Shown here: piece after piece, positions 1,952 to 39,221 of the stretch
Position numbering within the stretch: the first letter of the stretch is position 1
How the letters are laid out: the number at the start of each line of letters is the position of its first letter
Assembly (NCBI GenBank): GCA_048013815.1
Contig: CM106586.1
Location: 14,508,001-14,572,000 of the forward strand
Direction: 5' to 3'
Length of the DNA stretch: 64,000 bases
From: Setoptus koraiensis
Lineage: Eukaryota > Animalia > Arthropoda
The notes under the pieces: model-generated
The model's input: only the letters and a program-made list of their open reading frames with translations
Told to the model about the DNA's origin: nothing
The model's database searches: none
Program-made: the position numbers and the translations under genes

Positions 1952-1994
1952 TTGGACGGCACACCATTGGACGGCATACCATTGGACGGCACAC
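1952..1994. repeat. 15-bp tandem repeat TTGGACGGCAYACCA, about 3 copies
   Basis: Copies at 1952, 1967 and 1982 (last one partial). Confidence 0.85.
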
Positions 1995-2659
1995 GGAGAA
2001 TGGGGTTCCGGCGAGCTAGACAAACCCGCTGCGAGGAATATAAAATCATTTAGCTCGCCATGGCGCTTTGCTGCACTCGATTAGACGGCACGGGATACCT
2101 ACTGCGAAACGCTATGGCAGACGGCATGGGAGATGCCACGGGAGGTGGTCGGGTTCAAGTTGGACACAGGCCAGCAACCGCATATGAGGCCCGGCCCGCT
2201 CATATGGCTGGCGCAATGCCGATATATCGGTCCAATCGGTTCCAATGTACGATTGTAGTGGCGGCAAGCCGGCTCTCGCAGTGTGCAAGTTGCATATTGG
2301 CAAGCGACTGCCGTTACTTGCCACTAGGTGCTTGGCTGGCTAGGCTAGTGGGCCACTAGTAGTGGCTAAATTGGGGCTCCAGCCCGACTGGAGGGCCCGG
2401 CTTAAGTTGCTTTGCATCTGGCTGGCTGGCTGAGCGGGCCGTTATCTGCTGATGGCTCTACGGCTCGCCACCAATCGAGACTAATCGAAACTGGTGCTTC
2501 AGCGATTGGGGCTCCCTCTCGATCGGGTCTGCTCTTGGGTCTCTTGCCATTGACAATGGGACTTTGCGTGGCTTGTTGAGAGGGCCAGCAGCAAAGCAGC
2601 AGCCAGCGCAGCGAGACACACAAAATGAATCTGGCACCAACTATCTAATGTATACATTA

Positions 2660-2780
2660 ATTTGTTGTTGTTGTTGTTGCTGTTGTTGTTGTTTGTTGTC
2701 TAATTGGGGACACCAAGCACAGCCAAGGGCAACAAACATTACGCAACTGCGCTAATTTTCTCTCTCTCTCTCTCTCTCTG
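2660..2780. repeat. (TTG)n followed by (CT)n microsatellites
   Basis: Visible directly in the sequence. Confidence 0.85.
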
Positions 2781-3591
2781 TTTCTATATTACACATCTCG
2801 CGCTGTATGCCACTAGTGCTGGCTGTTGCCAGCGCAACGACTGTTTGCGACTGGCGACGGGACCTTAATTAAGATTCAATCTCTACTCCATCAGCTACAA
2901 GCGAGCAACTACAATTTTTCTCTCCTTCATGCGCACCCAATCCGATAGTGAAAAAGGGAGATGCCTGCTCTCCCAACCAGAGCCAGCAATCTCGCCAAAA
3001 GCACTAAATACGCGCACACTGGTACGTGGCAGCAGCGCCGCCGTAAAAAGCCGCTGCCGGGCCGGATAGCGGCAGAGGCGAATTATGGGCGAATGGACGC
3101 CGAAATCGCAGAGAATTGAAGCAAATAAACGGGGCCGCACATAAACAAAAAAGATTGCGCTCGCTTGATAAAGGCTAGCAACACATGGCAGCGAGCGACG
3201 TGCCGGTTCCGCCCGGTTCCGACGGGTTCCGACGGATTCTGAGGGGCAAAAAACACAAACGTATGTGTTGTGTTGGGGCCCCTTACATGCACACAATGGA
3301 CGCGTGTTTTCGGTTTGAATTGGCTTTTCTGGCTGCGCAAAGGTGCTTGCGCTGTTGCCAGCGAAACTGGCGGCCGTGTTCTTTCAATTTTCGCCAGCGC
3401 GCCCCATCAACAATTTTGAGGTGCATCTAATGGGAATTAAATGGCTCAAATACACAGTGACAAGCGTTTATAATAGCCTTTCAGTGTTTCTATTAAATGG
3501 CCATTAATCAAACCAGACACTCATGTAGATGGAGATTAAGACAATTCGGCGAAACATTTCGCCAGTTTGCTGGAGAATTTTCTCGACGAAT

Positions 3592-15392: not shown

Positions 15393-17279
15393 TCAGTTCG
15401 ATGTTATCAGGCGACATAAATTTCTCAGCTCGTAGTAAAACAATAGTTTTTCGTCTTTAGCAATTGCGTCTGTCATCGACGATTCTCTGGCCAGCCAAGA
15501 TTTGTACAAGTCTAACCTATTTATGGGCACCATGAAGCTGTTGATTTCTTCGCAATCTTCCGACAGAACACCAGCATCATTTGATCCATCTCCGACAAGT
15601 GCCGTCATCCTTTTCACGCCTAAACCGCTTTCACTAGATGTACTTACAATCATGTCGAAAAATTGCTTCAGCGTATGACCCGTCACCTGTAGTTCCTCAG
15701 GTTTGTCATTGCTTTCGTCGGAATTTCCATTGGTCCATTGTGCAACAATCCTGCAGATGTTATTCAGTATGCTCAGTTGACACATTGATTTGTATCTATT
15801 CTGGCTCTTGCGCACGATCCAATTGTCGTTTGTTGGTTCATTGAAATTTGCATCCATATACTGGTCAATATTTCTCAGATATGCCATTTCCATCGCGCTA
15901 ACAAGCGCTTCCCATTGAGGCTGGTAACTACTTTGAAGCTGCTCGTCATTTTCGAGCAGCAATTTCATCTGATAAAGTTTCAACAATGCACCCTTGGAAA
16001 GGTAATGCTTTTCTGGTTCAATAGTGGTCAGTTCGTGAAGTAGTTTGTCTTTCTCATCGTGATCCAATTCTGACAACGTGGCACCCATCACAGCAGGACT
16101 GTATCTGTTGGCCAAAACAACTTGTCGTTCTTTACTAACTCTGTGTTCGTCTGAAACAACACTTGGCCCCAACTCAGTGGTAAGCTCTGTCTTGGGACAT
16201 CGACTATTGTCGCGAACTTCCAACTCAATCTCTTGAGTCTGTCTACTGATTTGCTTGTTTGATTCAATTAATTCCTCGTAGTATTGCCGTATACCATTCA
16301 ATTTGTCACTCAATTCCTTATTCAAATACAATTGTTCGTCCTGTTTCCCATTGATCAGATTCAATTTTTGTTGCAGCTCCTCATTGAGCGACAATTGTTG
16401 TTTATACAAGGTCTCATAATTTTCCAATATTTTGTTTTTGTCCAGTTCAGCTTGATACGTCACTTGTAGTTGCCCATAACTGCGCTTTATTTCCTCTGTC
16501 AATCTATCCCGATCTGCATCTCTCATTCGCAGCGTCTCCAATTCGGATCGCAACTCTGCCATAACTGTCAACTGGTCTTGGTATTTTTGTTCCAGTTCTT
16601 TTAGCATGACCTCGTTAGATTCCCGGGTCGCTTCATTTGGATTTTGATCTAACATTTGAGCATCTTGAATATATTCAGATGGCGCTTCTCGTGCAACCAC
16701 TGGAACAGCGACAACTTCTGGATTTGAAAGGGTTTCTTGATTGGGATCAATTTCCTGATTGAGTGGCATCTCTTGATTGCCGATTGCCTCTTCGGGAGCG
16801 ATCTGAGCAATATCGCGACAATAGTCCATGATTCTTTGCTGGTTGTCTCTTGGGTACAACCAATAATCCACGCAATTTTCCAAGTCGCGTTTCACCATTG
16901 GGTCTAATTTCTGATTTGGAGTCGCTAAGATTTCATTGAATACTTCACCCCAATTGTCTGGCAGATCCGTGTTGGCCCGTTGCCTGAATCTGGCTATCGA
17001 AGGGGCATTCTTCTGCGAGTTTTCGAAGAATTTTTTCCAGTAGGATCTGCACCTCTCATTCAACTTAAGATTTTTGAATAGGAAGCGCCACTCCGTCAGC
17101 AACTGTGGTGTCCACATCGGACCCTCCGTTTGCTCTGCATCCTCGACTGCATAAGACTGAGGGTTGACATTCTCTATGTTGCTCCAATCTTCGTTCATAG
17201 CGCCATAAGCACTAGAAATTCCAATAAACAAACTGGTGACAATCACCAATGACCTGAGAGTTGCCGGCCACTTTTTCAT
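15393..17279 (-). CDS. Orphan secreted protein, about 628 aa, with central coiled coil
   Basis: Uninterrupted 646-codon frame. Likely start is MKKWPATLRSLVIVTSLFIGISSAYG (signal peptide) at 17279, downstream of a polypyrimidine/AG acceptor. Heptad-rich middle; no known domain recognised. Confidence 0.85.
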   Translation of the reverse strand: MKKWPATLRSLVIVTSLFIGISSAYGAMNEDWSNIENVNPQSYAVEDAEQTEGPMWTPQLLTEWRFLFKNLKLNERCRSYWKKFFENSQKNAPSIARFRQRANTDLPDNWGEVFNEILATPNQKLDPMVKRDLENCVDYWLYPRDNQQRIMDYCRDIAQIAPEEAIGNQEMPLNQEIDPNQETLSNPEVVAVPVVAREAPSEYIQDAQMLDQNPNEATRESNEVMLKELEQKYQDQLTVMAELRSELETLRMRDADRDRLTEEIKRSYGQLQVTYQAELDKNKILENYETLYKQQLSLNEELQQKLNLINGKQDEQLYLNKELSDKLNGIRQYYEELIESNKQISRQTQEIELEVRDNSRCPKTELTTELGPSVVSDEHRVSKERQVVLANRYSPAVMGATLSELDHDEKDKLLHELTTIEPEKHYLSKGALLKLYQMKLLLENDEQLQSSYQPQWEALVSAMEMAYLRNIDQYMDANFNEPTNDNWIVRKSQNRYKSMCQLSILNNICRIVAQWTNGNSDESNDKPEELQVTGHTLKQFFDMIVSTSSESGLGVKRMTALVGDGSNDAGVLSEDCEEINSFMVPINRLDLYKSWLARESSMTDAIAKDEKLLFYYELRNLCRLITSN

Positions 17280-18761
17280 ATCGGAAAGCGCTTCGACGTG
17301 GTATCTTTGATCGGAGATGCAAAAAAAAAACAAATTAGTCTGACAAATTATCTACTGTATATTTCTGTTTCGATTTTTAAAGTTACTACACCTCTGCAGC
17401 TCGCCATCCAACTTGAATATCGTTTGTACCTGTCAGCGTAAGGCGCACGCATGTCAAGCCAGAAAAATTAAAAATATACTCTTGTATATTAGATATCATC
17501 AACATGCGGACTGTCGATGTCAGGTATGGATATATTTAGACAATTTGTAACAATGAGCACAGTAAAGTAAGACCTAAAGTGTTTCGTTCAATGATAGCTA
17601 GGTTGCTTTACAAACTTTTCATAAAAAAGTCCTGTCTCAATAAGCCTGGATCCAATCATTTGGGATACAGCATTACCAGGTAGTTTGGATTTTTTTTTGC
17701 TGAAAATGAGCCTCTTGTGCTCTCGGTTTATACATCATCAGATCCAGCATCTAATTTCATCTCAAGGGTAACTGTGCCTCTTGTGAGTACATAGATGTGG
17801 GGAAACTCTCACACAGATTTCCATTTAGATCATTTTGCACGGGCATTGCTGTCGAGTGAACTTGATTTAAATATCGTTGCATCGTTTCACAAACGCCTAG
17901 TTATCATCAGATCTAAATCAGAGTAACACAATGACTTTGTATACCAGCTGGCCCAAACTTGGGTTTGGATTCTCTTTACATCATCATATCGATCATTCCA
18001 GGGAACCCATCTCCTGAGCATCAAATAGAAAAAATTTCAAACAAATACTGAAAGTCATTGCCTTTCTGATATGAGTTCTATCATAAAACATAATAGTCAG
18101 AAACAGTTTAGTTTGTTTCTGCATCGGCAGAGTGTTTACACGACAATCACAAAGGGCTATTGTTGTTACATTTAATTTATCATTTTTATTGAGGTTAATA
18201 TATAATTGATTTGAAAGAGATGCTTTTGATCAGTTATTCAATCACGAAACAAAGGGCAATAGCTGATTTGCTGCTTGTTGAGATAATATTGTTACCACTA
18301 TCTGTTTATTGTCGGTGTTGTTTACATTGATGACAATCAAGTCAATTACCTATCATTGGCAAAGCTCATATATCTATTACAAATTTTCGTTACATAACAA
18401 TTTATTTCACTTTATCTATTTATGATAGTTTTAATTTGACAATTGACTGAATACATACGCGTTTATCTATGCGCCATCGTGTTTGTTGTGTTCGGTATCT
18501 AAGCGACAATCTTGTCCTAGATGCCTAACTTCCATTTACTTAATAGATTAATAAGTTGATCCGACGAATCGGTAGTTAATGAAAAGAAGTCTCAAATGAA
18601 GCTAATTCGATGCTCAAGTACGAGGTTTATCGGCGTATGCAAGTAGCTAATTGTATTAATTAGTGAGAAGGTTTGGACCAAGATTAGCTATAGATTGATT
18701 GCTTTTGTACAGTACCAATCGTACTTGCGCAATCGATTTTCCCGGTGAATCAAATAATATA

Positions 18762-22345: not shown

Positions 22346-23482
22346 ATGAAGCTCACAATAACATCAGAAGACAATGTCTTCGAGACAAATATCGGTGGAG
22401 ATATGGAATTAGAAAATTTCATCGCCTACTGTCAAGCAGAGACAGATCTACCAGTGGACAGTTTTCATTTAGTACACAATGGAAGAATATTGAATTCAAT
22501 GAAAAGTACTGTCAGCCAATTGGGTATTGTTGATGGCGACATGATACTTATTGCACCTAAACAAAGCGGCATATCTCATCAAACCGCTAACTCCCCCTTT
22601 GGTGTCAATGCCAATGCCTCAGCGTCAGCTAACAGGACACTTCCATTCAATTTTGGCACCAGCGCAATGACTTCAAGTCATAGGACAAATCCTTCCATCA
22701 CGAGCGATTCGTCTCGTCACGGACGTCAGTTTGATCAATCTAATATCATCGACGATGAAATTACATTGGAACAAGCATCGAAAGTGAGAGACTCTTTTCT
22801 AGCCAATAATGAAGAAATGACTAGTTTGAAACTAAGCAATCCACCTCTAGCTGACGCCTTATGTAGTGGTAGTCTAGAGGAGTTTCATAAAGTAATGAAC
22901 GCTCAACATAAAAGGCGCCGCGAAGATCAGGCCCGCCAGAGAAGAATGCTCACCGCTGACCCATTTGATATTGAAGCCCAAAGGATGATCGCCGAGGAGA
23001 TACAAAGGCAACAAATTGATTCGAATATGCACGACGCCATTGAATTTATGCCAGAGGCTTTCGGTCAAGTGCACATGTTATATATCAAATGTAAAGTTAA
23101 TGGTACTCCGATAGATGCATTTGTCGATTCTGGTGCTCAGTCTACAATTATGTCGAAAGCGTGCGCCGAAAGATGCAACATAACTAGACTTATAGACAAA
23201 CGATGGTCTGGTGTAGCCCAGGGTGTTGGCACTCAGAAGATATTGGGTCGTATTCATATGTGTCAGATTCAAATAGAAAGTGATTTTCTACCTTCTTCAT
23301 TCAGTGTTCTTGAAGAGCAACCGATGGATATGCTTTTAGGGTTAGATATGCTAAAGAGACATCAATGTGTAATCGATCTCAAAGAGAACATTCTGAAAAT
23401 TGGAACAACAGGTTCTGTTACCAGATTTTTAAATGAGTCCGAGCTGCCCGCTCATGCGAGGTCTCATCATCACGATTCTTGA
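22346..23482 (+). CDS. DDI1: DNA damage-inducible protein 1 homolog (UBL + helical domain + retroviral-like aspartic protease), single exon
   Basis: N-terminal UBL, DPFDIEAQRMIAEEI, MPEAFGQVHMLYI, catalytic FVDSGAQ and MDMLLGLDMLKRHQCVIDL. Confidence 0.97.
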   Translation: MKLTITSEDNVFETNIGGDMELENFIAYCQAETDLPVDSFHLVHNGRILNSMKSTVSQLGIVDGDMILIAPKQSGISHQTANSPFGVNANASASANRTLPFNFGTSAMTSSHRTNPSITSDSSRHGRQFDQSNIIDDEITLEQASKVRDSFLANNEEMTSLKLSNPPLADALCSGSLEEFHKVMNAQHKRRREDQARQRRMLTADPFDIEAQRMIAEEIQRQQIDSNMHDAIEFMPEAFGQVHMLYIKCKVNGTPIDAFVDSGAQSTIMSKACAERCNITRLIDKRWSGVAQGVGTQKILGRIHMCQIQIESDFLPSSFSVLEEQPMDMLLGLDMLKRHQCVIDLKENILKIGTTGSVTRFLNESELPAHARSHHHDS

Positions 23483-25657
23483 TATTGAACAGGATCGAAA
23501 ATCGGACATTACTCCTCACGTTGATAGCAATCTTTATTACCAGTGACTATATAAAATGTGACTCAGATAAACATCAAAGTACATATCCTCATTTATGTAT
23601 CCACAGAAAAAAAGATATATTTGTACTGATCATATATTTCATCGTGAATATAGTTATATAAATGAACATACTGAAATAAATATTTTTTCATCATTCGTAA
23701 GATGTTGTAGCTTGCCTAAACTCTATGAGCCTAGAGTGCGAAGCTGAGAGGATCTTCACTATTAAGAAAGTTATCGTTTATCTAACTCCGAATTCGTAAT
23801 AACTTGCACACTCACATTCTCTACCATGTGAACCGAAAGTTTCTCTTTAGTAATCAATTCGAGAACCGACGCACTGTTGCCCAAATATGATCAGTCATCA
23901 TAATTACCCAATACAATCTTATATACCAAGAGGGGTGTGGTGTTCTTATTTTCGCCCCATGTCGAGCAAGAGAAAGATGAGACATAAGCATCTTCGAAGC
24001 TGCATACATCAGCAGATATGCTACATAAAATTAGCCGTAACGAACTAAAAACACTATACCTGTACAGATAGAAATGCGAATGAATTTGCGTCGAGCTGTT
24101 TGGTCAGAGGAGTCGAATACTAAACATACATGTACAATTACTTTACAACGTAATAGTAATGATGATATCACCGAATGTTGGATACGACTGATGAGGTGTT
24201 TTTTCGATGAAGTTTTGCTAAGATCTTCTTGTTGAAATATCTAGCAATTATCAGCTAACCTGTAAAATTGTAACATATTTGTTGAAAAAAAATTCTTGAC
24301 TCTCACTAGTGAAATATCAAGCGGAAGAGCTGCGGTCATGCAACGGTACGATATAGAGGATAAGTTGGATCTAGGTCAAAATAATCTATTCACCGGGTGT
24401 GAACTATCTGTTCGAATGGATACATTTCAACTGATGCTCAAATGGGGCATCGGTAAGAAAACTACGGTTCGAAAATAATTTACACCAAGTTGAAATTGTT
24501 GTAATCGTGCCGGATTTCGAGTTATTCAAGAGGGTTTAGTTCCTATCGATACAAACAAAAATTGCCCCAACGATCGCACACAGCTATTAGACTATCTCTT
24601 CTCCCTGTGAGCAGTTATCAGACTCATGAGTTATGTCAGCTCAACCGGACATGCGAGACTCAAGACGTGAGTGCTGAAAATCTGTCATGTTAGATTGATC
24701 TTTGAGTTGACCTTCATTGACTATTACTGAGATATTGCTTTTAGAAAACTAAAATACCTCAGAATACCTCAATCAATAGTTGGAAATGTTGGCAATGAGA
24801 TGTCGAATGAATGCATAAGTCTAAAGAGAGAGCTCATAGAATATTAGATCTTGGTCGAGCGTGTTCAAATGAGCAAGCGGGCGAAAGAGATCCCATAATG
24901 TAGTAGATAATGATTTGTATCGTTGGATATCGTCTTCTCTGTCTTGTCTCGATAATTGACACACGTTGTATATGCTGCCATCATTTTAGCTATCACTGGG
25001 GATAGTTGAAGTGCTATTAATAAGATGGAACAAGTTCAACAGTTGTTTGATGCCGTCAATCGAGACGGAATTGATTGATAATTTACATGGAGTAGTAGTG
25101 AGATTAACACTGTTAAAAGAAAAAGTGTGAGGGAAAAAGAGGCTGATAAGCTTATTGTCAATTTTGTAAAGCTTATTATAGAGTAAAGCGACATGATGCG
25201 GAATTCGCAAGTAATTATTATTCAATAGTTTCACTCAAGCCTGTATATGGGGCTATATAGTAACGTTTGGACTAATAGCAACGACTGAGATGGATAAGCT
25301 TGCAGTCTTGTAGTACCTCAATAATACCCCAAGATTCATTACAACGTTGCTTTGTAGCGCCTTGATCTACAGTTATGGAACTGATACGGAATGTCTCTAT
25401 GGATTGTTGTTCCTCGTTGCTTTCTAAAACCTAATTCTCTCCGTACAATAATCACCATGTATATCATATATATCATGTATATCACCAAGTGAATCACCAT
25501 TGATGTCATTTATCTACGGAAAATACAACTTATGTCTCATTCATCAAACATTATCTAGTGATGGTATCAATATTTTCTTTCTTCATTGCATAACAGATCA
25601 TCCACGCCACATATTCAACAAGAATATATTCTACTCATATTAATAATAATAATATGT

Positions 25658-25659
<2 letters not shown>

Positions 25660-25701
<42 letters not shown>

Positions 25702-25705
25702 TAGA
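25660..25705. repeat. (GA)n microsatellite
   Basis: Visible directly in the sequence. Confidence 0.9.
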
Positions 25706-26004
25706 GAAAAAAAGAAAGAAACTATTGATATGGAGATCATGATCGTTTAGACAACACTTTTGTGTTTTTATCATCCGAGTTATATCTGATTTATCTTCAC
25801 TTATTGGCCAACAGCATTCGATTTGGTTACTGTAGTCTTGACAAATCAATTGTTTGTGCAAGATAATAAAAGATAAAATATATAATTTACAATGGCTCTC
25901 TAGGACACATTAAAAATTATGCCATGGCCATTTATATCTGACAGCATTGAAGCAAGAAATTATAACGCAATCAGATATTCATCGATCCCATGACATACTG
26001 ATAA

Positions 26005-29000
26005 ATGGCAAATAGTTTTTATGACGTTACGTCTAAAACACTAGGCAGGGGTCATTATGGACTAGTCAAGTTGGCAAAACATTCTTTGACAGGTTAGTTG
26101 TTTTATTGTTCTATCGTAACATTCAAATATCTAAACTGGACAGGATCAACTTAAATTGAAAAATTATTTTTTTTCTTTTCTTCTTTGGATAGGTGAACCA
26201 GTTGCAATAAAGATAATTGAAAAAATTAGATTGGACAGGGATAGTCTATGTCAGCTAGGAACGGAAATATGTATACTCTTTAGGCTATCGGAATACGAGC
26301 ATCCAAATATTTTAAAATTGTATCAGGTTATTGATACTAAATCAAAGCTACATTTGATCACCGAATATTGTGGCTCAAATGCTTGCGATTTACACGATTA
26401 TATATTCAACAAGTACAAACGAAATGGACTTCCCGAAAGGGAGGCCCAACATATTTTTAAACAAATATGTAGTGCCATAGCCTATTGTCATTCATTGAAT
26501 ATTGTTCATAGGGACTTAAAACCGGAGAACATCTTGGTGACTGACCAAAGGCAGACCATTGGCAATAACTTTTCCGGTTCGCTCATTAAACTGATTGATT
26601 TTGGTTTTGCTAATCACTGGAATCCTGAAGAAAAAATGCGCACCTCATGTGGCACATTGGCGTATTCTGCTCCCGAACTATTACTGGGCGAGATGTATGA
26701 TGGGACAAAAGTGGACATCTGGGGATTAGGCGTTATGTTGTATATCCTTTTATTTGGCAAGAACCCCTTCATGCAAGTGAGTGACAACGAGACTCTAGCT
26801 AGGATTCTAGATTGTTCATTTACGATACCACAAAGAACTGATGTTAGTGAAGATGCCATTAATTTAGTTAGATGCCTGATAAGGAGAAATCCTAGCTCTC
26901 GCTTACTCATGCATCATTTGATCCAACACCCTTGGATGGAACATGGGAATTCACAGTCGTGTTTTACTTTTGATGTCGAGGACCATGATCAAGCCGAAAT
27001 AGCTAGTAATAATTTTCAGAGCTCACATCATTCGCACGAAGCTGAAAGCTATGCGCCCAATAGATTGAGACTGTCCCACTCTTCATCGGCCGTTGCCGGA
27101 TCCAGTGGACAACAACATCTACCAATGAAGAGGCATTTGGCAAAAGGAAGAAAAAAAGTTGCGACCCCATTGGCTGCTGATAATGAAAAAAGCTCTAGTG
27201 ATAAGATAGATGAAGACGAATGTAGTTCAACTAGCTCGCCTCTCAATAGATCAAGATCATTCTCTGGCGGCGAAAAGCAAACCGTCGAGTCATCGTCGCC
27301 TGTATCCAACGGTAGTGCCTGCAGTTACAACCTTGATAGATCTCAAAACACGCCAAGGTGTAGCAATGCCAAATCAACATCACCCGATGTTATCAGGGGT
27401 CTGTTGGATCAAGAAGAAGAATATATACATGATTATATAGTTAACGAGATACTATCGCTAGGTTGCCTCTGCGAATCCAGAGAATCAATGGAGCAATCGT
27501 TGAGGAATGCAAAATTTTCAAATAGGCGATTCTTCAACAGTTCAATAGTGAAAGAAGTTTCTGGGGTTCGAATCTCAAGAATGAAAAGCTCACCGGATTG
27601 CACCAAATTAACAAAAAGTCTCCCACGCACTAGGTCTGAGTTATTCAATAAATTCAACGACGAGTATATCAATGCCACATATCAATTGATGAGGGATCGT
27701 ATACGTAAAGACATTCATGAAATAAAGCACAATCTTGGCGCTCAATCGTGCGATTCACTGAATGCTGAATTCGGTGGTGAGCCATCACACAAGAGAAAAT
27801 CGTCATTTTTTGGAACAAATTCAAGCAACAGCATGCTTAGTGGAGGAATAGTGAGATCATCAACGGAAAGATTTGATGCCCGACATTCTATGAATGAAAA
27901 CAGTGGTCTCAAATCTAAACAACGGCAACAGCAAAGAATTTTGGGAATGAGACTGCTGCAACCTCAAAACAAACTTAAAGACAAATTTACGCAATTCTTT
28001 CGGGGTGGCTCACTAACAAGCGGCCATGACAACGAATTAGGCGAGCAATATTACAGTAGTAGTGTCAACATTGAACCGGAAGATAGTCAAACATTGAGGA
28101 CACTAGATAGTGATCAAAACGAGTTGAGTTGCGCCGATTCTAAGCGCGCCAGTAGGAACATTTTCAAGTATGGCACCAAAAAACAACAAGCTAAACCCGT
28201 TAGAAACAGGGACCAAGATCCTGCTGGCATGGGCGAACCTAGTCGTCCCTCGAAGACTCACGATTGGAAGATACTTAAAACACCCAACAGGTGCCAGGAA
28301 TGTAATTTATATGTCTATTTCAATGGTTGCGAGTGCAATTTGTGCGGCTTTGTTGCCCACAAGAAATGCGTAACGTCGCTTGTGATCAAGTGTAGCGGTC
28401 ATAAAGTGTCCGCTCGTCAAAGAGTTGCTGCTCCTATATTTGGCCAACCGCTCAAAGTTCAAGTGATTGATTTCGTCAAAAGATTTGTCCAAGATATAGA
28501 CACAAGAGGACTTAGGCTCAAAGGAATCTATCGGGTATCATCGGTCAAATCTAAAGTGGATAAACTATGCTCTAGCTACGATCAAAATGCTTACTTGGTT
28601 GATTTGTCCTCGTTTCATCCTAATATTGTGGCCAATGCCCTCAAGTTATATCTCAGACAGCTTCCTGAACCTTTATTAACATTCAAACTATATCCATTAT
28701 TTGTCGCTATAGCCAAAAAATATCCAGCAACCTCACAGCAAACGAAATCTTCTTCTGTTGACAGCACATCATCGAACACAGACCCTCTTTTGATAATAGA
28801 AATGCGTCAAGTTGTTGAGCTACTGCCAAGTTTGAACAAGGAAATAGTGTCTATCATTATGAGACACCTCAAAAGGGTTGCCGATATGGCACACGAGAAT
28901 CAAATGACTGCCTCAAATCTGTCGATAGTGTTTGGGCCAACCTTGTTAAATTCCAACGATTCAAACACATTTGTTGATACTGTTCATCAATCTAGAGTTG

Positions 29001-29146
29001 TGGAATTGCTTATCAATAGTGTTGAACAAATATTTCTACAATGCACCACTTTTAAATCTACAGCTGTCATGAGATTAAATTTAAGCGAAATGAGGAGACA
29101 ATTCTTTGTGTCTTCTACTGCAGTAGGCCCCGAACAGGATCGTTGA
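26005..29146 (+). CDS. SNRK: SNRK-type Ser/Thr kinase fused to C1 + RhoGAP domains, about 1013 aa (exons 26005-26092 and 26193-29146)
   Basis: Exon 1 reads MANSFYDVTSKTLGRGHYGLVKLAKHSLT|G and splices in phase into EPVAIK. Kinase motifs HRDLKPEN, DFG and CGTLAYSAPE are present. An SNRK UBA-like INATYQLMRDRI follows. Then come C1 (HDW..C..C..C..C..H..C..C, about 28258-28395) and RhoGAP (IFGQPL, GIYRVS, ANALKLYLRQLPEPL, NQMTASNLSIVFGPTL). Confidence 0.9.
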
Positions 29147-29550: not shown

Positions 29551-31230
29551 TCATGAACCCCTAGATTCACTTTGAACAGATGCTTTCACTGCTATATCCA
29601 TTATCGATGTGGATATCGAATCGTTATGTTTCAAACTTGACGCTTTATGAAGATAGTCGATGGCCTTATCCCAATCAGTTTTGAGGCAATAAAGAAATCC
29701 TAAGGTTGAGTAGGTAGATGCGTTATGCGGTATCAGAGTTAGAGCTTTTTTATGGTATTCTATTGCCTCATCGTACCTCTTTAACCTTCGGAGAGAATGT
29801 CCAATGTTGTTCAATAGAGGTTCCCACTTTTCCTGGAACTTGTCGCCAGAAAACCAGGCTTTCGATGACGTCGTCTTCAGGACGCTGAGGCCTTTATAAG
29901 CTTCCAAAAAACACTCAAGGGCAAGAGAAAAGTTCTTGTTTCTGTAGTGAATGACACCAAATTCGTGCAAAACGAAAGGGTCCTGCGGGGCGACGCTTTT
30001 GGCTTGTGTCAAAAATCTTTCAGCTAATTTGCAATTATCCGAGCGTCCATATTCCACTCCTATGTACAATAATGGTAGATGACAGCCCTTCATCAGATGA
30101 AAGGCCTTGAAGTAGGCAGCCATTGCTTGATCATGCTCCTTCTCAACGGCGAATGAGTGGCCAAAAACAAGCCACGCTGGTCCAAAAACATTATCTAGTG
30201 TAGTGGCTTTACTGAGATATCTTCGGGCTTGTTCTACTTTGTTGATTATTAAATAGTAACACCCAACGGCAAACCAGGATATTGCATTCTCTGGATAAAG
30301 ATCTACAAGCTTGTGCGCTATATCAAACAGTTGGTTGGGTTTGTTAAGTTCCATAAGACAGGATATGTGAACGGGTAAGCATTGAGTATGGTAGACATCC
30401 CTCTCTAGGACTGTTGTCGTTAGTTCAAATGCAGATTGATAATCGCAATTGTAGTAATGGCGTTCGGCTAGGGCTGTCATAACATCTACATTGTTGGACA
30501 AATATTCTAGATCTGAGGGAATTGATATCTGGTAGGGTTTATCATACTTTTTAAATTGTAGCTGATAGAATAATTTCACAAAATCACCCATTTCTGGCTC
30601 AGATTGAAAGTTTTTATCGATGTTGAAACTGTTGAACAACAGCAGCTCCTCTTCACTCGTGAGCATATGATGACATGTAAGGCATGTATAAGCCTCAAAG
30701 CAGAATATATCATGATGTAAAGCTTCCCTGAAACATTTTTCAGCCATCTGACGGTTATCTAAACATTCATAAATTTTACCCTTGAGTAAAGATATCGAAC
30801 CAAGCCATCTGCTTTTATTTTGATTGTATAAAGGTTCCTGTTTGTTCTGTTGCTGGTGATGTCTGTTACTATGTCTTCCAATGAAGGTGGTCTCATTCAA
30901 ATGCCCCTCGCTAGCTGATACAATTGGCAACTCCAATATTTGAAAGGCCTCTCTATAGTCCTTCTCGGCATAGTGACATTTAGCGGCTAGGTACAGACAG
31001 GGCAAACTGGTCATATGAAAGTTTCTCGATTTTATTGTGTGGGCAGCACGATGATACTCCTTTAAATTGTAGAGACATCGTGCTCTTTCGTAAGCGTCGT
31101 TGGCGTCGTTAGTTATGTAAAGAACCTTTTCTGCCCAAAAGGCTGCCGATTCATAATCTTGATTGACTATGAAACACTTCACTAGATCCCTCAGCTTCTC
31201 GGCCATTCCTTTTATATCAGGCTGATTCAT
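29551..31230 (-). CDS. CDC16: Cell division cycle protein 16 / APC6 (TPR subunit of APC/C), single exon, about 559 aa
   Basis: YESAAFWAEKV, ALHHDIFCFEAY, AERHYYNCDY, LVDLYPENAISWFAVGCYY and FGPAWLVFGHSFAVEKEHDQAMAAYFKA. Likely ATG at 31230. Confidence 0.96.
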   Translation of the reverse strand: MNQPDIKGMAEKLRDLVKCFIVNQDYESAAFWAEKVLYITNDANDAYERARCLYNLKEYHRAAHTIKSRNFHMTSLPCLYLAAKCHYAEKDYREAFQILELPIVSASEGHLNETTFIGRHSNRHHQQQNKQEPLYNQNKSRWLGSISLLKGKIYECLDNRQMAEKCFREALHHDIFCFEAYTCLTCHHMLTSEEELLLFNSFNIDKNFQSEPEMGDFVKLFYQLQFKKYDKPYQISIPSDLEYLSNNVDVMTALAERHYYNCDYQSAFELTTTVLERDVYHTQCLPVHISCLMELNKPNQLFDIAHKLVDLYPENAISWFAVGCYYLIINKVEQARRYLSKATTLDNVFGPAWLVFGHSFAVEKEHDQAMAAYFKAFHLMKGCHLPLLYIGVEYGRSDNCKLAERFLTQAKSVAPQDPFVLHEFGVIHYRNKNFSLALECFLEAYKGLSVLKTTSSKAWFSGDKFQEKWEPLLNNIGHSLRRLKRYDEAIEYHKKALTLIPHNASTYSTLGFLYCLKTDWDKAIDYLHKASSLKHNDSISTSIMDIAVKASVQSESRGS

Positions 31231-31600
31231 TGTGTATGTATGAGTAGAGGATGTTTTCAGATATGTCGTGTGAGTGTCCGATTTCACGTGAGATAAAAAC
31301 GGATAGAGTTGGGAAACCTCTAATAAAATTACAAACTAATGCAGCCATTTGTTCCTAGAACCCGTCAGATCTTGGGGCGGGAATTTCAAAAACTTTTTTT
31401 TTCTGTGATGATCTTGCACCAGATGTCTCTGTCCCTAATTCATGTTAATGCACACTCTGTGTTACCATTTTGCACCAAAACCCCTGCTACGCTCAAGTAA
31501 GATCAGAGCACTACGGTTTGTCACTTGCACTACGATATACTGCATATCGAACGTCTGTGTGCTGCGAACTTCTTAATGCAGTGAGTGTCGGTGAATCAAG

Positions 31601-32656: not shown

Positions 32657-34074
32657 ATGAGTTTATGCAGCCGTTTGGTGGGATTTGTCCACCTTGTTAG
32701 AAATATTGAAGATTTTGCAGCAACTAGGTCCATATTTACCCTCATATCATTATGTTGCATGGCCAATTTTCTCAACTCCGTCGACAGGATTCTAATGCCC
32801 ATAGCTATTATTCAAATGACAGATAAATACAATTGGAACTTACATCTGCAAGGTTGGATTCTCAGCGCTTTCTCGTGTGGCTTTATAACAAGTCAAATTA
32901 TTGCTTCCCCAGCTGCTAACAAGTTCGGTGGAAAACAAGTGCTGGCATTTGCACTTACTATCTGGTCGCTTGCATCACTTGCTATTCCATTAGTTGCCCA
33001 CAACTTGCTTGCCCTCATATGCACAAGGATCGTCATAGGTATCGTTGAAGGACTTATTTTACCTACAATCTACCACATGTTTGCTCACAGAGTTCCAGCC
33101 AATGAAAGATCCAGGGCATTCGGATATTTAGCAGCCGCAGGTTCTATCAGTCAAGTATTCACAGCACTTCTGAGTCCACATTTACCCTGGAAACTCATGT
33201 TCTATTCCTTGGGTTCATTTGGGTTACTGTGGGTGGCACTCTGGCTTAGATTGTACCCAGCACTGTCTATAACAGAGAGTATTGACCATGTGCCTTTATT
33301 GTATTCTACCCCCAATTTGAAAAGTATTAAGATTTTGCAATTCTTCAATTGTTGGCCGGCTTGGGCCATCTATATTGCATCTTTCTCTCAAAATTGGTCA
33401 AATTACATCATTCTAATTTGGTTACCCACATACCTCTCCAGAAATCTCGGGGCAGATAGACAAAGTATAAGCTTGACCGCTATAGCATACTTCATAAATT
33501 CTATTTGTGGCGTCTGTAAGTATCTATTTCAACGAACGTACCCTACTCTATTAAAGTTTCAAGTTTTTTTTAACCATTCATTTTTTTATCATACTTTTCT
33601 GTAGTTTCTGGACACGTAGCCGATTCAATGATTGCTAGCAAATGGTCTATACTAGCTGTAAGAAGGTGGATGACTGTGATAGGATTGATGGGCCCAGGAA
33701 TATGTCTACTATGTTTTGCATTTTTACACAGCCTAGCATCGGCCATAATTGTCATATCTATCGCGATGGCATTTTGTGCATTCAATTCTGCCGGTCATCT
33801 GTCCAATCATGCAGATATCGCCCCAAATCACGCCGGAATGACATTCGCTATCTCGAATACCATAGCAACCATACCTGGAATATTGTGCGGACCTATAACT
33901 GCCGAGTTAGTTGGTCAGTCACAAGGAAGGTGGTTCCCAGTTTTTGCATTAGCCGCAAGTATTAATTTTGCTGGTGCTGCTATCTATGCATCTCAATCTA
34001 GTGATCGGCCACAGTGGGGACAGGAAATTCCGATAGACTACGCAGGCCCAGAAAGTATTGATCTCAAGTCTTGA
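32657..34074 (+). CDS. SLC17/MFS anion:cation symporter family (sialin/VNUT-like), about 442 aa (exons 32657-33515 and 33605-34074)
   Basis: DRILMPIAI, QGWILSAF..G...SQI, FGGKQVL, GIVEGLILP, WLPTYL and NHADIAPNHAGMTFAISNTIATIPGI. The GT-AG intron 33516-33604 restores the frame (total 1329 nt). Confidence 0.92.
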
Positions 34075-35051: not shown

Positions 35052-36137
35052 CTAACTATTCTTACTGACTAACTTGCTCGTATCTTTGTTATCCATTTGC
35101 TTATATTGCTTGTCGTACGTTACAACATTATTGTCTTTGTCACCCACTGAATAGTTGTTGTTGTTGTTGTCGGTATGATTGCGTATGAATCTCTCAACAC
35201 TGCTGAGAGCTTTATCAAATTGGGCCAGATCTCCGATCAATTGTTGAACAAAATCTTGATTGCTCGACATGGTTTTGTACATATCCAAAAGACTTCGACC
35301 GAAATGGGCCCCGTCGCTTCCATGGTCTGAACTGACATCACGCTTCTTTCTACCAGTTGATAACGTGTATGAGCCAGAAGTAAGCATGGACACAAAACAA
35401 GCTGCAATCAATGGCAGAATGATTATACCGGCACCAACAACAATGACAGCGGGAACAACAAGCCAAAACCAATCAGATTTGGCTGTTGCCCCATGATCAT
35501 ACTCCCAATTGTGCATATCATGACCTCTGGCCAGTCTTATCAAGCTTGACGCCATTGAACCAAGAGATGACAATTTATCATCGCCAGAGTTGACTGAATG
35601 ATTTCCAGACTGGTGACCCTTATTGGTAGATTTAACCTGTTGCTGGTTGCTTGACGTCATACTGGACAAACTCTTAACTAAGCCACTGGCCAGACTTTTG
35701 AAATCTAGCCTATCTAAGGAACCGAGTACTTGATTGATTGCCGATGATGTTGATGATGATTTTTGTGAACGTGATTTCTTTGTTGGTTTAGCTGTCGATA
35801 CAATTTTTTCATCATTCACTCGTATTTGCTCACCATGATGGAAGGTCTTTTCTTCATTGCTAGATATAGACGAAGATTTGCTGTTGCTGTTGTTTTGTTG
35901 ATTTTCTGGCAATATAGTAAGATCTTCTTGCTTGTTGCTTGATTCTTGCTGATTGGCATGGTGCAAAATTGTATCAATTGATGATGTCGGTGCTGATGAC
36001 GCATGCATGGACGATGATGAAAAATCAAGGGAGTTTATATTTTCTAATTGTGATGCTTGGTGGCTATTGGCTAGAGTCAATCTAATTAGTATTAAATTGA
36101 CAGCCAGAATGGTTAAGCTTGATTTAAGTAAAGCCAT
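35052..36137 (-). CDS. Orphan signal-peptide protein (361 aa): Ser-rich region, hydrophobic/TM segment, then GRKKR
   Basis: Signal peptide MALLKSSLTILAVNLILIRLTLA; WFWLVVPAVIVVGAGIIILPLIAACFVSML; TLSTGRKKRDV; clean ORF. Confidence 0.85.
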   Translation of the reverse strand: MALLKSSLTILAVNLILIRLTLANSHQASQLENINSLDFSSSSMHASSAPTSSIDTILHHANQQESSNKQEDLTILPENQQNNSNSKSSSISSNEEKTFHHGEQIRVNDEKIVSTAKPTKKSRSQKSSSTSSAINQVLGSLDRLDFKSLASGLVKSLSSMTSSNQQQVKSTNKGHQSGNHSVNSGDDKLSSLGSMASSLIRLARGHDMHNWEYDHGATAKSDWFWLVVPAVIVVGAGIIILPLIAACFVSMLTSGSYTLSTGRKKRDVSSDHGSDGAHFGRSLLDMYKTMSSNQDFVQQLIGDLAQFDKALSSVERFIRNHTDNNNNNYSVGDKDNNVVTYDKQYKQMDNKDTSKLVSKNS

Positions 36138-37604: not shown

Positions 37605-39221
37605 TCAGTCCAGCCGATGGTAAAGAAACGAGGCCTTCTCATTTCCAGTTTCGTTGAGTTTAGTTCTTAGACCTCTATATGTTCGCTTACTTCTATCTTT
37701 AACATTTTTGTAGGCAAGTCTCATTACAGGATTGATGCTTCGTAAAAACAATCCACCCTTTCCTTTCATGGTATTCAACCAATCTTGATATTGGTTTTTC
37801 AAATGTTTTGCTGACCTTTCCTCGTACAAATTAACTTCATACTCAAATTCGTCGTTAAATCCCTCACCTGCATTGAGCATGTCTAATCTACCCTCAACGA
37901 ATTGTCGAAAAATTTGCAGATGTAACATCTTCTGAAGATAAGGCTGCACAGGTGCTGGTCTTGTTTTAACAAATGTATCATAGTTGAAAGTTATCTTGTC
38001 GCCGTTGTTGAATTGGAGTGCCTCCCTATAGCCACCAATGAGCATTACAACAGCTTTTAGGAAGGCCCTTGCCAAACAGTCACCAATAATAATGGGACCT
38101 TTAAGATTTCGTTTCAGACAATTAACGATCTCCATGGGCATTGTTTGCAAATCATCATAGGGTGTTTCTATGACATTTTCGTCTGCTCTTAAAATTACAA
38201 CTTCTACAATATCTTTGGGGTTGATTTCTTTCATTATACAATCGGGAACTCCAATGAGAAATGGCATAGGCGCCGTGACATAACCAACCAAATGTGATGG
38301 TAATATTGGAATATAGATGTGTTGCCAATTCATTGGATAAATAAGGGTATTAGCGGCTTGGACACATGATGACAATCGATCTAGTCTCTTTGATGTGACT
38401 ATTATCCTCCTCTCATTTAGTATGCTGGCAAAAATAGTTATCATATTGTTCACATCTATGGCACTGAAATACTCGGCAAGATTTCTCTAGTTAGATTTGC
38501 AAAAGAAGCAGAGGGCGCGGAAATTTCGACCTTTGTGTTATCAAATAATAACAATAATAAAATATTTGAAAAATGTGTAGACATAATACTTACGTCTTGC
38601 GGAATTGTTGGTATGATACAAGTATCAGGACAAAAGGCAACAAAGTCTTTCGTCTTGCCATCTGCAAAATATGAAACCGTAAAATTGGCCCCGGGGGTCG
38701 GCATCTCACTCATATGGAGACATCTTAGGAATTCTAAAAGACATGATTGCTATATTATATATTAGAGGGGATAAGATTGTCAGAAACAATTTATATATGG
38801 TTATAAATCGTTTTTCAACAGGTGTTAACCGTAGATATTGGTAAGCACTATATCGAACCTTGTTTGTATCTATGTGCAACTGAGCAATGTGATTGATGAT
38901 CTTGTAAAAAGTATCATGCCAAGGCAATTGACTTAGAAGTACGAGGCAAATATCTGAATTGGGTGTTAGTCTACAATAGCCAAATGTCCACTTGGAATCA
39001 CCATTAGTGAGAACAAAGGAGAAGTGAGTTACATTAGTGACTTCCATGTCGCAAGGATAGGCGAATTTTGGCACAGATTTCAAGACCTCTCCATCTTTGA
39101 ATTCCTTTGGGTATCTTCTTTTGATAAATGGTGGGTCTCCATTGATAGGTAAGCCAACCTCGCAATAACAATCATATATCTTTTGTGCGTCGCTCTTGTA
39201 CCGCGTCGATCGATTATTCAT
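37605..39221 (-). CDS. DENND1: DENN domain protein 1 (connecdenn, Rab35 GEF family), about 466 aa (exons 39221-38859, 38749-38594, 38486-37605)
   Basis: uDENN: VPKFAYPC..FSFVLTNGDSKWTFGYCR..LPWHDTFYK. DENN: RNLAEYFSAIDVNNM..ILNERRII..YPMNWQHIYIP..APMPFLIG. dDENN: LQIFRQFVEGRL. In-phase GT-AG introns (total 1401 nt). Confidence 0.93.

What the first reader, a model, noticed from the sequence alone, without database searches (positions are those of the whole stretch)
26005..29146. SNRK kinase fused to a C1-RhoGAP module in one reading frame
Seen: after a single 5' intron, one stop-free frame of about 985 codons carries an intact SNRK-type kinase (GRGHYG, VAIK, HRDLKPEN, DFG, APE). It continues through a UBA-like segment and a long Ser-rich linker into a complete C1 zinc finger and a RhoGAP with its arginine finger (GIYR; CGG at 28532-28534). 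Known: SNRK is an AMPK-related, LKB1-activated kinase with no GAP domain. The C1-RhoGAP pair of ARHGAP29/ARHGAP45/GMIP normally follows an F-BAR domain. Inference: the F-BAR part was replaced by an SNRK kinase, giving a chimera that could couple LKB1/AMPK-family signalling directly to Rho inactivation. I do not know this architecture from other animals.
Basis: partly seen in the sequence, partly recalled or inferred. Interest (0 to 1): 0.82.

Follow-up and report, generated by a model that had tools for sequence, protein, structure and literature searches.

The report
SNRK kinase fused to a RhoGAP
In what looks like an early-branching gall-mite genome, the SNRK kinase gene and a Rho-inactivating GAP gene, which related mites keep as two separate genes, form one unbroken 1,013-codon gene; very large protein collections hold no such combination, but nobody has shown that the fused protein is made.

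Summary
An 88-base first exon, a 100-base intron and a stop-free 2,954-base second exon encode 1,013 residues. These carry an intact SNRK kinase, a displaced UBA-like module, the SNRK tail, a complete C1 zinc finger and a RhoGAP with its arginine finger (CGG 28532-28534).

In all eriophyoid-type relatives found, SNRK (about 570-780 aa) and the ARHGAP29/45-type GAP (about 560-740 aa) are separate genes. In one sample they lie on different contigs. No kinase+C1+RhoGAP protein appeared among the best 120 hits in 5.8 billion proteins or the best 150 in 1.84 billion cluster representatives.

- The GAP half sits at its ancestral locus, next to a CDC16-like APC subunit gene.
- The SNRK half keeps an ancestral intron, so it is not a retrocopy.
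- The join removed SNRK's conserved C-terminal motif (LPLARKCSLVSEE) and the GAP's N-terminal leader, leaving no intergenic DNA.
- The junction has coding-type codon usage.

All eriophoid-type GAPs already lack the F-BAR.

Best reading: a real, lineage-specific in-frame fusion, probably by deletion. Expression is unproven, because no data from this species or close kin exist in the collections. The scan has noted other in-frame fusions in this genome.

The parts
26005..26092 (+). Exon 1: ATG plus 29 codons and 1 base (phase 1). It encodes MANSFYDVTSKTLGRGHYGLVKLAKHSLT, including the glycine-rich loop.
   Evidence: Sequence read; spliced translation; tblastn of relatives' SNRK N-termini hits 26005-26136.
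26093..26192 (+). The only intron, 100 bases, GTTAGT...ATAG. It sits in the Gly codon of LTG|EPVAIK.
   Evidence: Sequence. Fragariocoptes setiger SNRK has an intron at the same position and phase (L011).
26193..29146 (+). Exon 2: a stop-free frame of 984 codons followed by TGA (29144-29146).
26195..26959 (+). SNRK-type protein kinase domain, exon-2 part (full-protein residues 31-285). It carries VAIK Lys36, Glu54, HRD Asp137, DFG Asp165, T-loop Thr180 and APE.
   Evidence: Pfam Pkinase 3e-63; best PDB match SNRK 5yks; residues checked; AF2 pLDDT above 90.
26966..27388 (+). Ser-rich (22% Ser) disordered insertion between the kinase and the UBA-like module.
   Evidence: AF2 pLDDT about 30; composition; aligns loosely with relatives' SNRK.
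27389..27745 (+). UBA-like helical module. The three helices are split by a loop of about 35 residues. It contains the conserved NDEYINATYQLMRDRI.
   Evidence: AF2 helices at q406-421, 429-449 and 480-516 with pLDDT 79-94. Structural alignment to SIK3/MARK2 kinase+UBA covers 280-289 residues, against about 240 for kinase-only chains. No sequence hit.
27953..28012 (+). Conserved SNRK tail motif LLQPQNKLKDKFTQFFRGGS. It is the last clearly SNRK-derived sequence.
   Evidence: Alignment with 15 eriophyoid-type SNRK tails; BLASTP ends at q606.
28013..28237 (+). Junction, 75 codons. Weak SNRK-tail similarity reaches about 28192 and weak GAP-leader similarity begins at about 28094-28170. There is no intergenic remnant. 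ATG (Met709 of the full protein) at 28229-28231 is a possible internal start.
   Evidence: Codon-usage score is +0.335 bits per codon in frame, against -0.49 and -0.97 out of frame. No repeats.
28259..28393 (+). C1 zinc finger, H-x10-C-x2-C-x10-C-x2-C-x4-H-x2-C-x7-C. All eight ligands are present, with short loops as in the mite orthologues.
   Evidence: Pfam C1_1 24.6 bits. The ligands are invariant in a 31-sequence alignment from mites to mammals. Coordinates; AF2 pLDDT 85-92.
28472..28957 (+). RhoGAP domain with arginine finger Arg810 (CGG 28532-28534), Lys847 and Asn938 (full-protein numbering).
   Evidence: Pfam RhoGAP 3e-37; PDB sequence hits to chimaerins and ARHGAP12/15; Foldseek to chimaerin C1+GAP 3.6e-15; invariant columns kept.
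29551..31287 (-). Convergent neighbour, a CDC16-like TPR subunit of the anaphase-promoting complex. It is the synteny anchor showing that the GAP half sits at the ancestral GAP locus.
   Evidence: Pfam ANAPC3/TPR. It is 64-65% identical to the gene that follows the GAP in L004 and L009. The same GAP->APC(-) pair is seen in L004, L007, L008, L009 and L010.

Best explanation
This is a genuine, lineage-specific gene fusion in an early-branching eriophyoid-type mite with a compact genome.

Origin: the SNRK gene came to lie directly upstream of the ARHGAP29/45-type C1-RhoGAP gene, on the same strand. A deletion (or a rearrangement with breakpoints inside both genes) then removed four things: the last ~45 codons of SNRK including its conserved LPLARKCSLVSEE motif, its stop codon, the intergenic DNA with the GAP promoter, and the GAP's ~100-200-codon N-terminal leader. 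The join happened to be in frame.

Product: a 1,013-residue protein with an active-looking SNRK kinase, its UBA-like module and a long disordered Ser-rich tail. This runs straight into an intact atypical C1 finger and a catalytically competent RhoGAP.

Inferred working: the GAP half now depends on the SNRK promoter and start codon. The kinase and the Rho-inactivating module are therefore made in a 1:1 ratio and held together by a flexible tether. The C1 finger could bring the kinase to membranes. The kinase, or its upstream activator, could control the GAP through the linker.

What is shown: the anatomy, the orthology of both halves, the separateness of the genes in relatives, and the absence of the architecture elsewhere.

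What is inferred: the deletion mechanism, expression as one polypeptide, Rho specificity, and any kinase-GAP cross-talk.
For: - The continuous frame is far beyond chance, and the other frames are closed.
- SNRK homology runs to residue q606 (weakly to about q665), and GAP homology starts at about q659-682. The two coding sequences therefore abut, with no room for a stop, a UTR or a promoter.
- The junction has coding-type codon usage and no repeat that could seed a misjoin.
- Both halves keep every column that is invariant in 30 homologues each, including all catalytic and zinc-binding residues, and both fold confidently.
- The GAP half keeps its ancestral convergent neighbour.
- The SNRK half keeps the ancestral phase-1 intron shared with Fragariocoptes, so it is not a retrocopy.
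- In separate trees both halves take the same position, at or near the base of the eriophyoid-type sequences (with the early-branching Fragariocoptes for SNRK; sister to all others for the GAP), as expected for one genome.
- Relatives have two genes, on two contigs in one sample (SRR10674617). Fragariocoptes SNRK ends with its own motif and stop.
- In one relative the two genes lie only 5 kb apart on opposite strands (L009), so adjacency through a local rearrangement is plausible.
- No protein with this architecture appears among the best hits of two very large searches.
- Unchecked notes of this scan report other in-frame fusions in the same genome.
Against: - There is no transcript, proteome or raw-read evidence. 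This species and its close kin are absent from the protein and metagenome collections searched.
- Only this 64-kb window is visible, so a second, unfused SNRK or GAP copy elsewhere in the genome cannot be excluded.
- An ATG just before the GAP homology (28229-28231) could give a separate GAP product.
- The fusion lost a SNRK motif that is conserved in 22 of 22 eriophoid-type SNRKs and in more distant homologues. This might impair SNRK function.
- The age of the fusion is unknown, so intact residues could simply reflect a recent event.
Confidence: 0.65

Rival explanations
1. The fusion is real in the DNA, but the locus does not work as one protein. The GAP half would be made on its own from an internal transcription or translation start (for example Met709, ATG 28229-28231). 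The full-length read-through product would then be minor, unstable or absent. Alternatively, only the SNRK part matters and the GAP part merely rides along.
For: There is an in-frame ATG three codons before the start of GAP homology. The two halves are joined by about 160 residues predicted to be disordered, so each could function alone. The relatives' GAPs work without any kinase.
Against: The ancestral GAP promoter region is gone, and SNRK-derived coding sequence runs up to the GAP. A SNRK message has no stop before 29144, so any mRNA from the SNRK start encodes the fusion. Met709 aligns to an internal Leu of the relatives' leader, not to their start codon.
Confidence: 0.17
2. Assembly or consensus artefact: either a chimeric join of two loci inside the linker, or an indel or base error that hides the SNRK stop codon.
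For: No independent sequence of this species could be found to confirm the join. The scan reports several fusions in this genome, which could reflect an assembly habit rather than biology. Fusion artefacts are common in some annotations (PMC12964723, abstract only).
Against: A chimeric join would have to fall in the same orientation and in frame. It would also have to fall exactly where the SNRK tail ends and the GAP homology begins, with no repeat at the join and with coding-type codon usage across it. A hidden stop would still leave the two coding sequences abutting, with no intergenic DNA. The helminth artefacts are gene-model merges across introns, not continuous ORFs. Both halves have the same phylogenetic placement.
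Confidence: 0.1
3. A young chimeric duplicate that is decaying. Intact parental SNRK and GAP genes would exist elsewhere in the genome, and this copy would be a by-product of segmental duplication with little or no function.
For: Only 64 kb of the genome could be inspected. The fusion lacks conserved terminal motifs of both parents.
Against: The GAP half occupies the ancestral GAP locus next to the CDC16-like gene. Both halves have diverged from relatives as much as orthologues would, yet they keep all invariant residues and have no stops in 1,013 codons. The SNRK half retains its ancestral intron.
Confidence: 0.08

Closest known systems
SNRK (SNF-related serine/threonine kinase), an AMPK-related kinase activated by LKB1
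   Same: The kinase domain's best match is human SNRK (5yks). It has all catalytic motifs, the T-loop Thr and a UBA-like helical module. The eriophyoid-type SNRK tail motif LLQPQxKxxDKFTxFF is present, and the intron position is shared with Fragariocoptes SNRK.
   Different: It lacks the C-terminal LPLARKCS(L/I/V)VSEE motif found in all other SNRKs examined and continues into a C1-RhoGAP. The UBA-like module is displaced by a disordered insert of about 140 residues, although this is shared with mite relatives. The residue at -2 of the T-loop Thr is Met rather than Leu.
ARHGAP29 (PARG1) / ARHGAP45 (HMHA1) / GMIP: F-BAR-C1-RhoGAP proteins, GAPs for RhoA
   Same: The C1+RhoGAP pair is orthologous by best named hits and by tree. 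The arginine finger and other GAP residues are kept, the zinc ligands are complete, and the neighbouring gene is conserved.
   Different: There is no GMIP-like FCH/F-BAR domain, a loss shared with all eriophyoid-type orthologues. There is no N-terminal leader. The position in front of the C1 is occupied by a whole kinase protein.
Eriophyoid-type stand-alone C1-RhoGAP (e.g. Aceria tosichella 'Rho GTPase-activating protein 29', 600 aa; Logan proteins P0021-P0049)
   Same: About 50-57% identical over C1+RhoGAP. It has the same short-loop C1 and the same downstream CDC16-like gene.
   Different: These start with their own Met and a leader carrying conserved motifs (MGAIDP, KIKSASVE, LKPSxSTSCL). 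The fusion has lost that leader.
Other C1-RhoGAP architectures (chimaerins SH2-C1-RhoGAP; MgcRacGAP; myosin IX motor-C1-RhoGAP) and kinase-plus-C1 Rho-pathway proteins (ROCK, MRCK, citron kinase) - named from general knowledge
   Same: A C1 finger directly precedes a RhoGAP, with a different regulatory or enzymatic module in front. The best structural match is chimaerin C1+GAP.
   Different: None of these combines a protein kinase domain with a RhoGAP. ROCK, MRCK and citron kinase are Rho effectors, not Rho inactivators, and their kinases belong to the AGC group, not the AMPK-related group.
Gene fusions in streamlined eriophyoid genomes
   Same: Eriophyoid genomes are tiny, intron-poor and have very short intergenic regions (Aculops lycopersici, 32.5 Mb; PMC7738191). 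That setting favours fusion by deletion. The scan's own unchecked notes list three other in-frame fusions in this genome.
   Different: The Aculops paper does not discuss gene fusions in its own text: the single occurrence of the term is in its reference list. This particular pair is not described anywhere I could search.

Membership tests
SNRK (AMPK-related kinase family) | Active Ser/Thr kinase domain closest to SNRK among the AMPK-related kinases | tested here: met
   Pfam Pkinase 3e-63. PDB phmmer gives SNRK 4.8e-62, next SIK3 2.8e-51 and MARK about 1e-45. All catalytic residues are present.
SNRK (AMPK-related kinase family) | Activation-loop threonine, the LKB1 site (T173 in human) | tested here: met
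   KMRTSCGTLAYSAPE, Thr180 of the full protein. The -2 residue is Met, not Leu (PMC7508454 states that Leu at -2 is needed), so LKB1 dependence itself is not testable here.
SNRK (AMPK-related kinase family) | UBA domain following the kinase domain | tested here: inconclusive
   No sequence match. AF2 predicts three confident helices that extend the structural alignment to SIK3/MARK2 kinase+UBA, but with rmsd 4-5.7 A. The module is displaced by about 140 residues and split by a loop.
SNRK (AMPK-related kinase family) | Orthology to SNRK of related mites (tail motifs, intron position, tree) | tested here: met
   42-45% identity over 606 residues, including the tail motif. Shared phase-1 intron. 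In the tree it groups with Fragariocoptes inside a 100/99 eriophyoid-type clade.
SNRK (AMPK-related kinase family) | Conserved C-terminal-region motif LPLARKCS(L/I/V)VSEE | tested here: not met
   Present in 22 eriophyoid-type and 5 more distant SNRK homologues. Absent from the protein and from all frames of the window.
ARHGAP29/ARHGAP45/GMIP | RhoGAP domain with catalytic arginine finger | tested here: met
   Pfam RhoGAP 3e-37. GIYR Arg810 (CGG 28532-28534), Lys847 and Asn938. RhoGAP fold confirmed.
ARHGAP29/ARHGAP45/GMIP | C1 zinc finger directly before the RhoGAP | tested here: met
   All eight ligands are present and invariant across 31 homologues. Pfam C1_1 scores 24.6 bits, just below its 26.5 cut-off, much like the mite orthologues at 28-29 bits.
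ARHGAP29/ARHGAP45/GMIP | N-terminal F-BAR (GMIP-like FCH) domain | tested here: not met
   There is no FCH hit in the fusion. It is also absent from the Aceria and Logan orthologues, but present in Tetranychus (PF22699, 1e-29).
ARHGAP29/ARHGAP45/GMIP | Orthology (best named hits, tree, synteny) | tested here: met
   Named hits are ARHGAP45/29/HA-1 from arthropods to vertebrates. The GAP half sits in a 100/100 clade with the eriophyoid-type GAPs. The downstream CDC16-like gene is conserved.
ARHGAP29/ARHGAP45/GMIP | GAP activity specific for RhoA | not testable with these tools
   Inferred from family knowledge only.

The most novel reading that the evidence does not exclude
The fusion could be a 'Rosetta stone' for a conserved but undescribed pathway. 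In animals generally, SNRK would restrain RhoA-ROCK signalling by acting on, or together with, an ARHGAP29/45/GMIP-type RhoGAP, and this mite has hard-wired the pair into one polypeptide. This would give a mechanism for the reported rise in ROCK signalling when SNRK is lost in mouse cardiomyocytes (reviewed in PMC7508454). No paper that I could search links SNRK directly to these GAPs.
Probability: 0.12. Interest if true: 0.7.

Novelty: new variant of a known kind. Interest (0 to 1): 0.47.

Why it matters
If the protein is made, it is a domain architecture not seen elsewhere: an AMPK-related kinase joined to a C1 finger and a RhoGAP. It puts an LKB1-family kinase and a Rho off-switch on one chain.

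It gives a clean, datable example of how genome compaction by deletion can create new signalling proteins. Both parent genes, the lost pieces and the retained ancestral neighbour are all identifiable.

It also yields a testable hypothesis for other animals: that SNRK and ARHGAP29/45/GMIP act together upstream of RhoA-ROCK.

If the fusion is not expressed, or is an artefact, it is only a curiosity of one assembly.

Tried and rejected
1. Looked for the same architecture elsewhere.
   - Full-length search of 5.8 billion proteins and an exhaustive phmmer of 1.84 billion representatives.
   - All long multi-stretch hits turned out to be multi-kinase concatenations, or C1+kinase+EF-hand (P0147), with no RhoGAP.
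2. Looked for independent sequence of this species across the junction.
   - Junction-piece protein search, exact-protein look-up of the neighbouring gene and a metagenome protein scan all found nothing.
   - An exact 20-mer scan gave one contig, L015, that does not align to the window at all. It is a chance match.
3. A RhoGAP gene 9 kb from SNRK in locus L013 looked like linkage. It is a different RhoGAP family member, 20% identical, so it was rejected.
4. Searched for remnants of the lost SNRK C-terminal motif and the GAP leader in other frames, in the flanks and in the whole window. None were found.
5. A joint alignment of the fusion with SNRK-only and GAP-only proteins (A1) misaligned and was discarded. 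The halves were then aligned and folded separately.
6. A sequence search for a UBA domain found nothing.
7. A scan for AMPK-type phosphorylation motifs found none in the GAP half, so I name no cis-phosphorylation site.
8. There are no Rfam families or tRNAs in the window.
9. Literature searches for SNRK with ARHGAP29 or GMIP returned only gene lists.
Full report
**Numbering.** 'q' numbers count from the first full codon of exon 2 (window 26195). Full-protein numbers are q + 30.

**1. What is there**

The window holds an open frame 26156..29146 on the + strand, 996 codons without a stop. Reading the DNA gives the gene model:
- ATG at 26005.
- An 88-base exon 1 ending in ...TTG ACA G.
- A donor GTTAGT at 26093 and an acceptor AG at 26191-26192.
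- Exon 2 from 26193 to the TGA at 29144-29146.

The spliced product has 1,013 residues and begins MANSFYDVTSKTLGRGHYGLVKLAKHSLTGEPVAIK.

Pfam finds Pkinase (3e-63) and RhoGAP (3e-37). It also finds C1_1 at 24.6 bits, just under its cut-off. Across the junction the other two frames are closed. Only about 1% of shuffles of the 75 junction codons are stop-free, and none of 5,000 shuffles of the whole 426-codon linker is.

**2. Identity of the two halves**

The kinase matches human SNRK best among solved structures, at 4.8e-62 against 2.8e-51 for SIK3. The C-terminal part matches C1+RhoGAP proteins.

In the 5.8-billion-protein collection the nearest proteins are from eriophyoid (gall and rust) mites:
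- 'SNF-related serine/threonine-protein kinase' of Fragariocoptes setiger, 45% identity over 58% of the query.
- SNRK of Aceria tosichella.
- 'Rho GTPase-activating protein 29' of Aceria tosichella.
- Many unnamed proteins from Logan assemblies.
- Further out, ARHGAP45/ARHGAP29/HA-1 from arthropods to vertebrates.

Separate trees place both halves at or near the base of the eriophyoid-type sequences:
- The SNRK half groups with the early-branching Fragariocoptes, outside the 18-row Aceria-containing clade.
- The GAP half is sister (90/90) to all 30 eriophyoid-type GAPs, inside a 100/100 clade apart from spider mites, Limulus and insects.

So the two halves belong to one genome, apparently of an early-branching eriophyoid-type mite. 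The scan's index says the genome is in two pieces with about 775 noted windows. That fits the small genomes and few chromosomes of eriophyoids (PMC7738191).

**3. Relatives have two genes**

None of the 120 best hits or of the 150 best among 1.84 billion cluster representatives carries both a kinase and a RhoGAP. I checked all 249 retrieved proteins with phmmer. The long multi-stretch hits are concatenated kinases, and the one 'double' hit is C1+kinase+kinase+EF-hand.

In relatives SNRK is about 570-780 aa and the GAP about 560-740 aa. The genomic contexts differ:
- SNRK -> RRM protein -> MTMR6-like (L001, L006).
- CoA synthase -> GAP -> CDC16-like APC subunit (convergent) -> GH31 (L004, L007).

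In sample SRR10674617 the two genes lie on two different 30-kb contigs. Fragariocoptes SNRK ends with its own ...YALPLARKCSLVSEEALSEEN and a stop, and its contig holds no GAP. In one relative (L009) SNRK lies only 5 kb from the GAP, on the opposite strand, beyond the APC gene, a primase subunit gene and an Arf gene. The two genes can therefore be close neighbours in this group.

**4. Anatomy of the join**

SNRK homology runs from the start to q606, including the conserved tail motif LLQPQxKxxDKFTxFFRxGS. Weak similarity to SNRK tails continues to about q665. GAP homology starts firmly at q682 (PSRPSKTHDWKILKTPNRCQEC) and weakly from about q659.

Two pieces are missing:
- The last ~45 residues of SNRK with the motif LPLARKCS(L/I/V)VSEE. 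This motif is present in 22 of 22 eriophyoid-type SNRKs and in five more distant homologues. It is absent from every frame of the window.
- The GAP's 100-200-residue leader with the motifs MGAIDP, KIKSASVE and LKPSxSTSCL.

No intergenic remnant is left. The junction scores as coding in frame 0 (+0.335 bits per codon against -0.49 and -0.97) and holds no repeats.

The GAP half keeps its ancestral convergent neighbour, the CDC16-like gene at 29551-31287, which is 64-65% identical to the relatives'. None of the other neighbours of either gene in relatives is in the window. The SNRK half keeps a phase-1 intron at exactly the position found in Fragariocoptes SNRK, so it is not a retrocopy.

**5. 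State of the domains**

In alignments with 30 homologues each, the fusion keeps every invariant column of SNRK (75 columns) and of the C1-RhoGAP (56 columns, including all eight zinc ligands, the arginine finger, Lys and Asn).

AlphaFold2 with these alignments gives:
- A confident kinase domain.
- A disordered Ser-rich insert (q258-398).
- Three confident helices (q406-421, 429-449, 480-516).
- A disordered tail through the junction (q518-681).
- A confident C1 and RhoGAP.

The three helices lengthen the structural alignment to the SIK3 and MARK2 kinase+UBA crystals from about 240 to 280-289 residues. The C1+GAP model matches chimaerin best (3.6e-15). No structure of the ARHGAP29/45/GMIP group appeared among the matches.

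**6. The F-BAR question**

Pfam shows that the eriophyoid-type GAPs, including the Aceria protein, have only C1+RhoGAP. Tetranychus keeps the GMIP-like FCH domain.

One loss at the base of the eriophyoid-type clade, followed by the fusion in the window's lineage, is the most parsimonious history. What the fusion replaced was then a short low-complexity leader. The window's GAP is sister to all the others, so a second, independent F-BAR loss through the fusion event is not strictly excluded.

**7. How it most likely arose and works**

Most likely the two genes became tandem neighbours. A deletion of roughly 1 kb then removed the end of SNRK, the spacer and the start of the GAP, and the join happened to be in frame. 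This is an inference. It fits the deletion-driven compaction of eriophyoid genomes (PMC7738191) and the other in-frame fusions that this scan has noted in the same genome: Myt1-PR-Set7, IPMK-PPIP5K and Pus10-TAP42 (unchecked notes).

The GAP's own upstream region is gone and no stop precedes 29144. Any message from the SNRK start therefore encodes the fusion, and the well-preserved GAP half has no obvious other way to be expressed, apart from a possible internal start at Met709 (28229-28231).

Functionally I infer a kinase and a Rho off-switch made 1:1 on a flexible tether. No AMPK-type phosphorylation motif lies in the GAP half, so I propose no specific cis-site.

The T-loop Thr is kept, but the -2 residue is Met where LKB1 substrates have Leu (PMC7508454). 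The LKB1 link is therefore assumed, not shown. RhoA specificity is family knowledge only.

In mammals SNRK is reported to act on ROCK signalling (review PMC7508454, citing Cossette et al. 2016). No paper I could search links SNRK to ARHGAP29, ARHGAP45 or GMIP. The fusion can be read as a hint of such a link, but the probability is low.

**8. What could not be done**

No data from this species or from close relatives are in the collections. So there is no independent check of the join, no transcript evidence and no estimate of the fusion's age. Only 64 kb of the genome was visible, so other copies of either gene cannot be excluded.

**9. Verdict**

| Reading | Probability |
|---|---|
| Real, lineage-specific in-frame fusion | about 0.65 |
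| Real in the DNA but not used as one protein | about 0.17 |
| Assembly artefact | about 0.10 |
| Decaying duplicate | about 0.08 |

This is a new combination of well-known domains: a new variant of a known kind. It is of moderate interest until expression is shown.

Noticed in passing
window 29551-31287 (-); L004 11964-13760, L007 11937-13745, L009 7533-9332: The convergent pair 'C1-RhoGAP gene -> CDC16-like APC subunit gene' is conserved between the window and three different eriophyoid-type relatives, although almost nothing else around it is syntenic.
   Followed up: partly
proteins P0021-P0049, P0047 (Aceria tosichella); compare P0059 (Tetranychus urticae): All eriophyoid-type orthologues of ARHGAP29/45 lack the F-BAR (GMIP-like FCH) domain that spider mites and other arthropods keep. 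Instead they have a 100-200-residue leader with conserved short motifs (MGAIDP, KIKSASVE, LKPSxSTSCL). This looks like a clade-wide domain loss.
   Followed up: partly
SNRK homologues P0001-P0020, P0030, P0033, P0123, P0126, P0127, P0206, P0218: A short motif LPLARKCS(L/I/V)VSEE is conserved in SNRK homologues well beyond eriophyoids. It is C-terminal in eriophyoid-type proteins and internal in longer ones. I know of no described function for it, and it is the piece the fusion lost.
   Followed up: partly
window 26966-27745 and relatives' SNRK: In these mites the UBA-like helices of SNRK are separated from the kinase domain by a disordered Ser-rich insert of about 140 residues. The third helix is split off by a loop of about 35 residues. 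The insert carries a conserved RTRSLS-type motif (RSRSFS in the window).
   Followed up: partly
L009 5531-14697 (Logan SRR29524840): In this relative SNRK (735 aa, - strand) lies only 5 kb from the C1-RhoGAP gene (+ strand). The APC subunit, a primase small subunit and an Arf-like gene lie between them.
   Followed up: yes
window 23483-26004: About 2.5 kb upstream of the fusion gene has no ORF longer than 82 codons, no Rfam or tRNA hit, and a (GA)25 microsatellite at 25658-25707. That is unusually long for non-coding DNA in an otherwise gene-dense window.
   Followed up: partly
window 15393-17333 (-) and 35052-36137 (-): Two long ORFs (646 and 361 codons) have no Pfam match.
   Followed up: no
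window 22346-23482 (+), 32657-33604 (+), 37605-39221 (-): Ordinary neighbours: a DDI1/DDI2-type ubiquitin-like aspartyl protease, an MFS transporter exon, and a DENN-domain gene split over at least two ORFs.
   Followed up: no
L013 1596-3695 (ENA metagenome scaffold): The SNRK of this relative is called as two ORFs (409 + 256 aa), although tblastn aligns the fusion's SNRK part continuously over 1686-3461. This points to a frameshift, an intron or a calling artefact in that contig.
   Followed up: no
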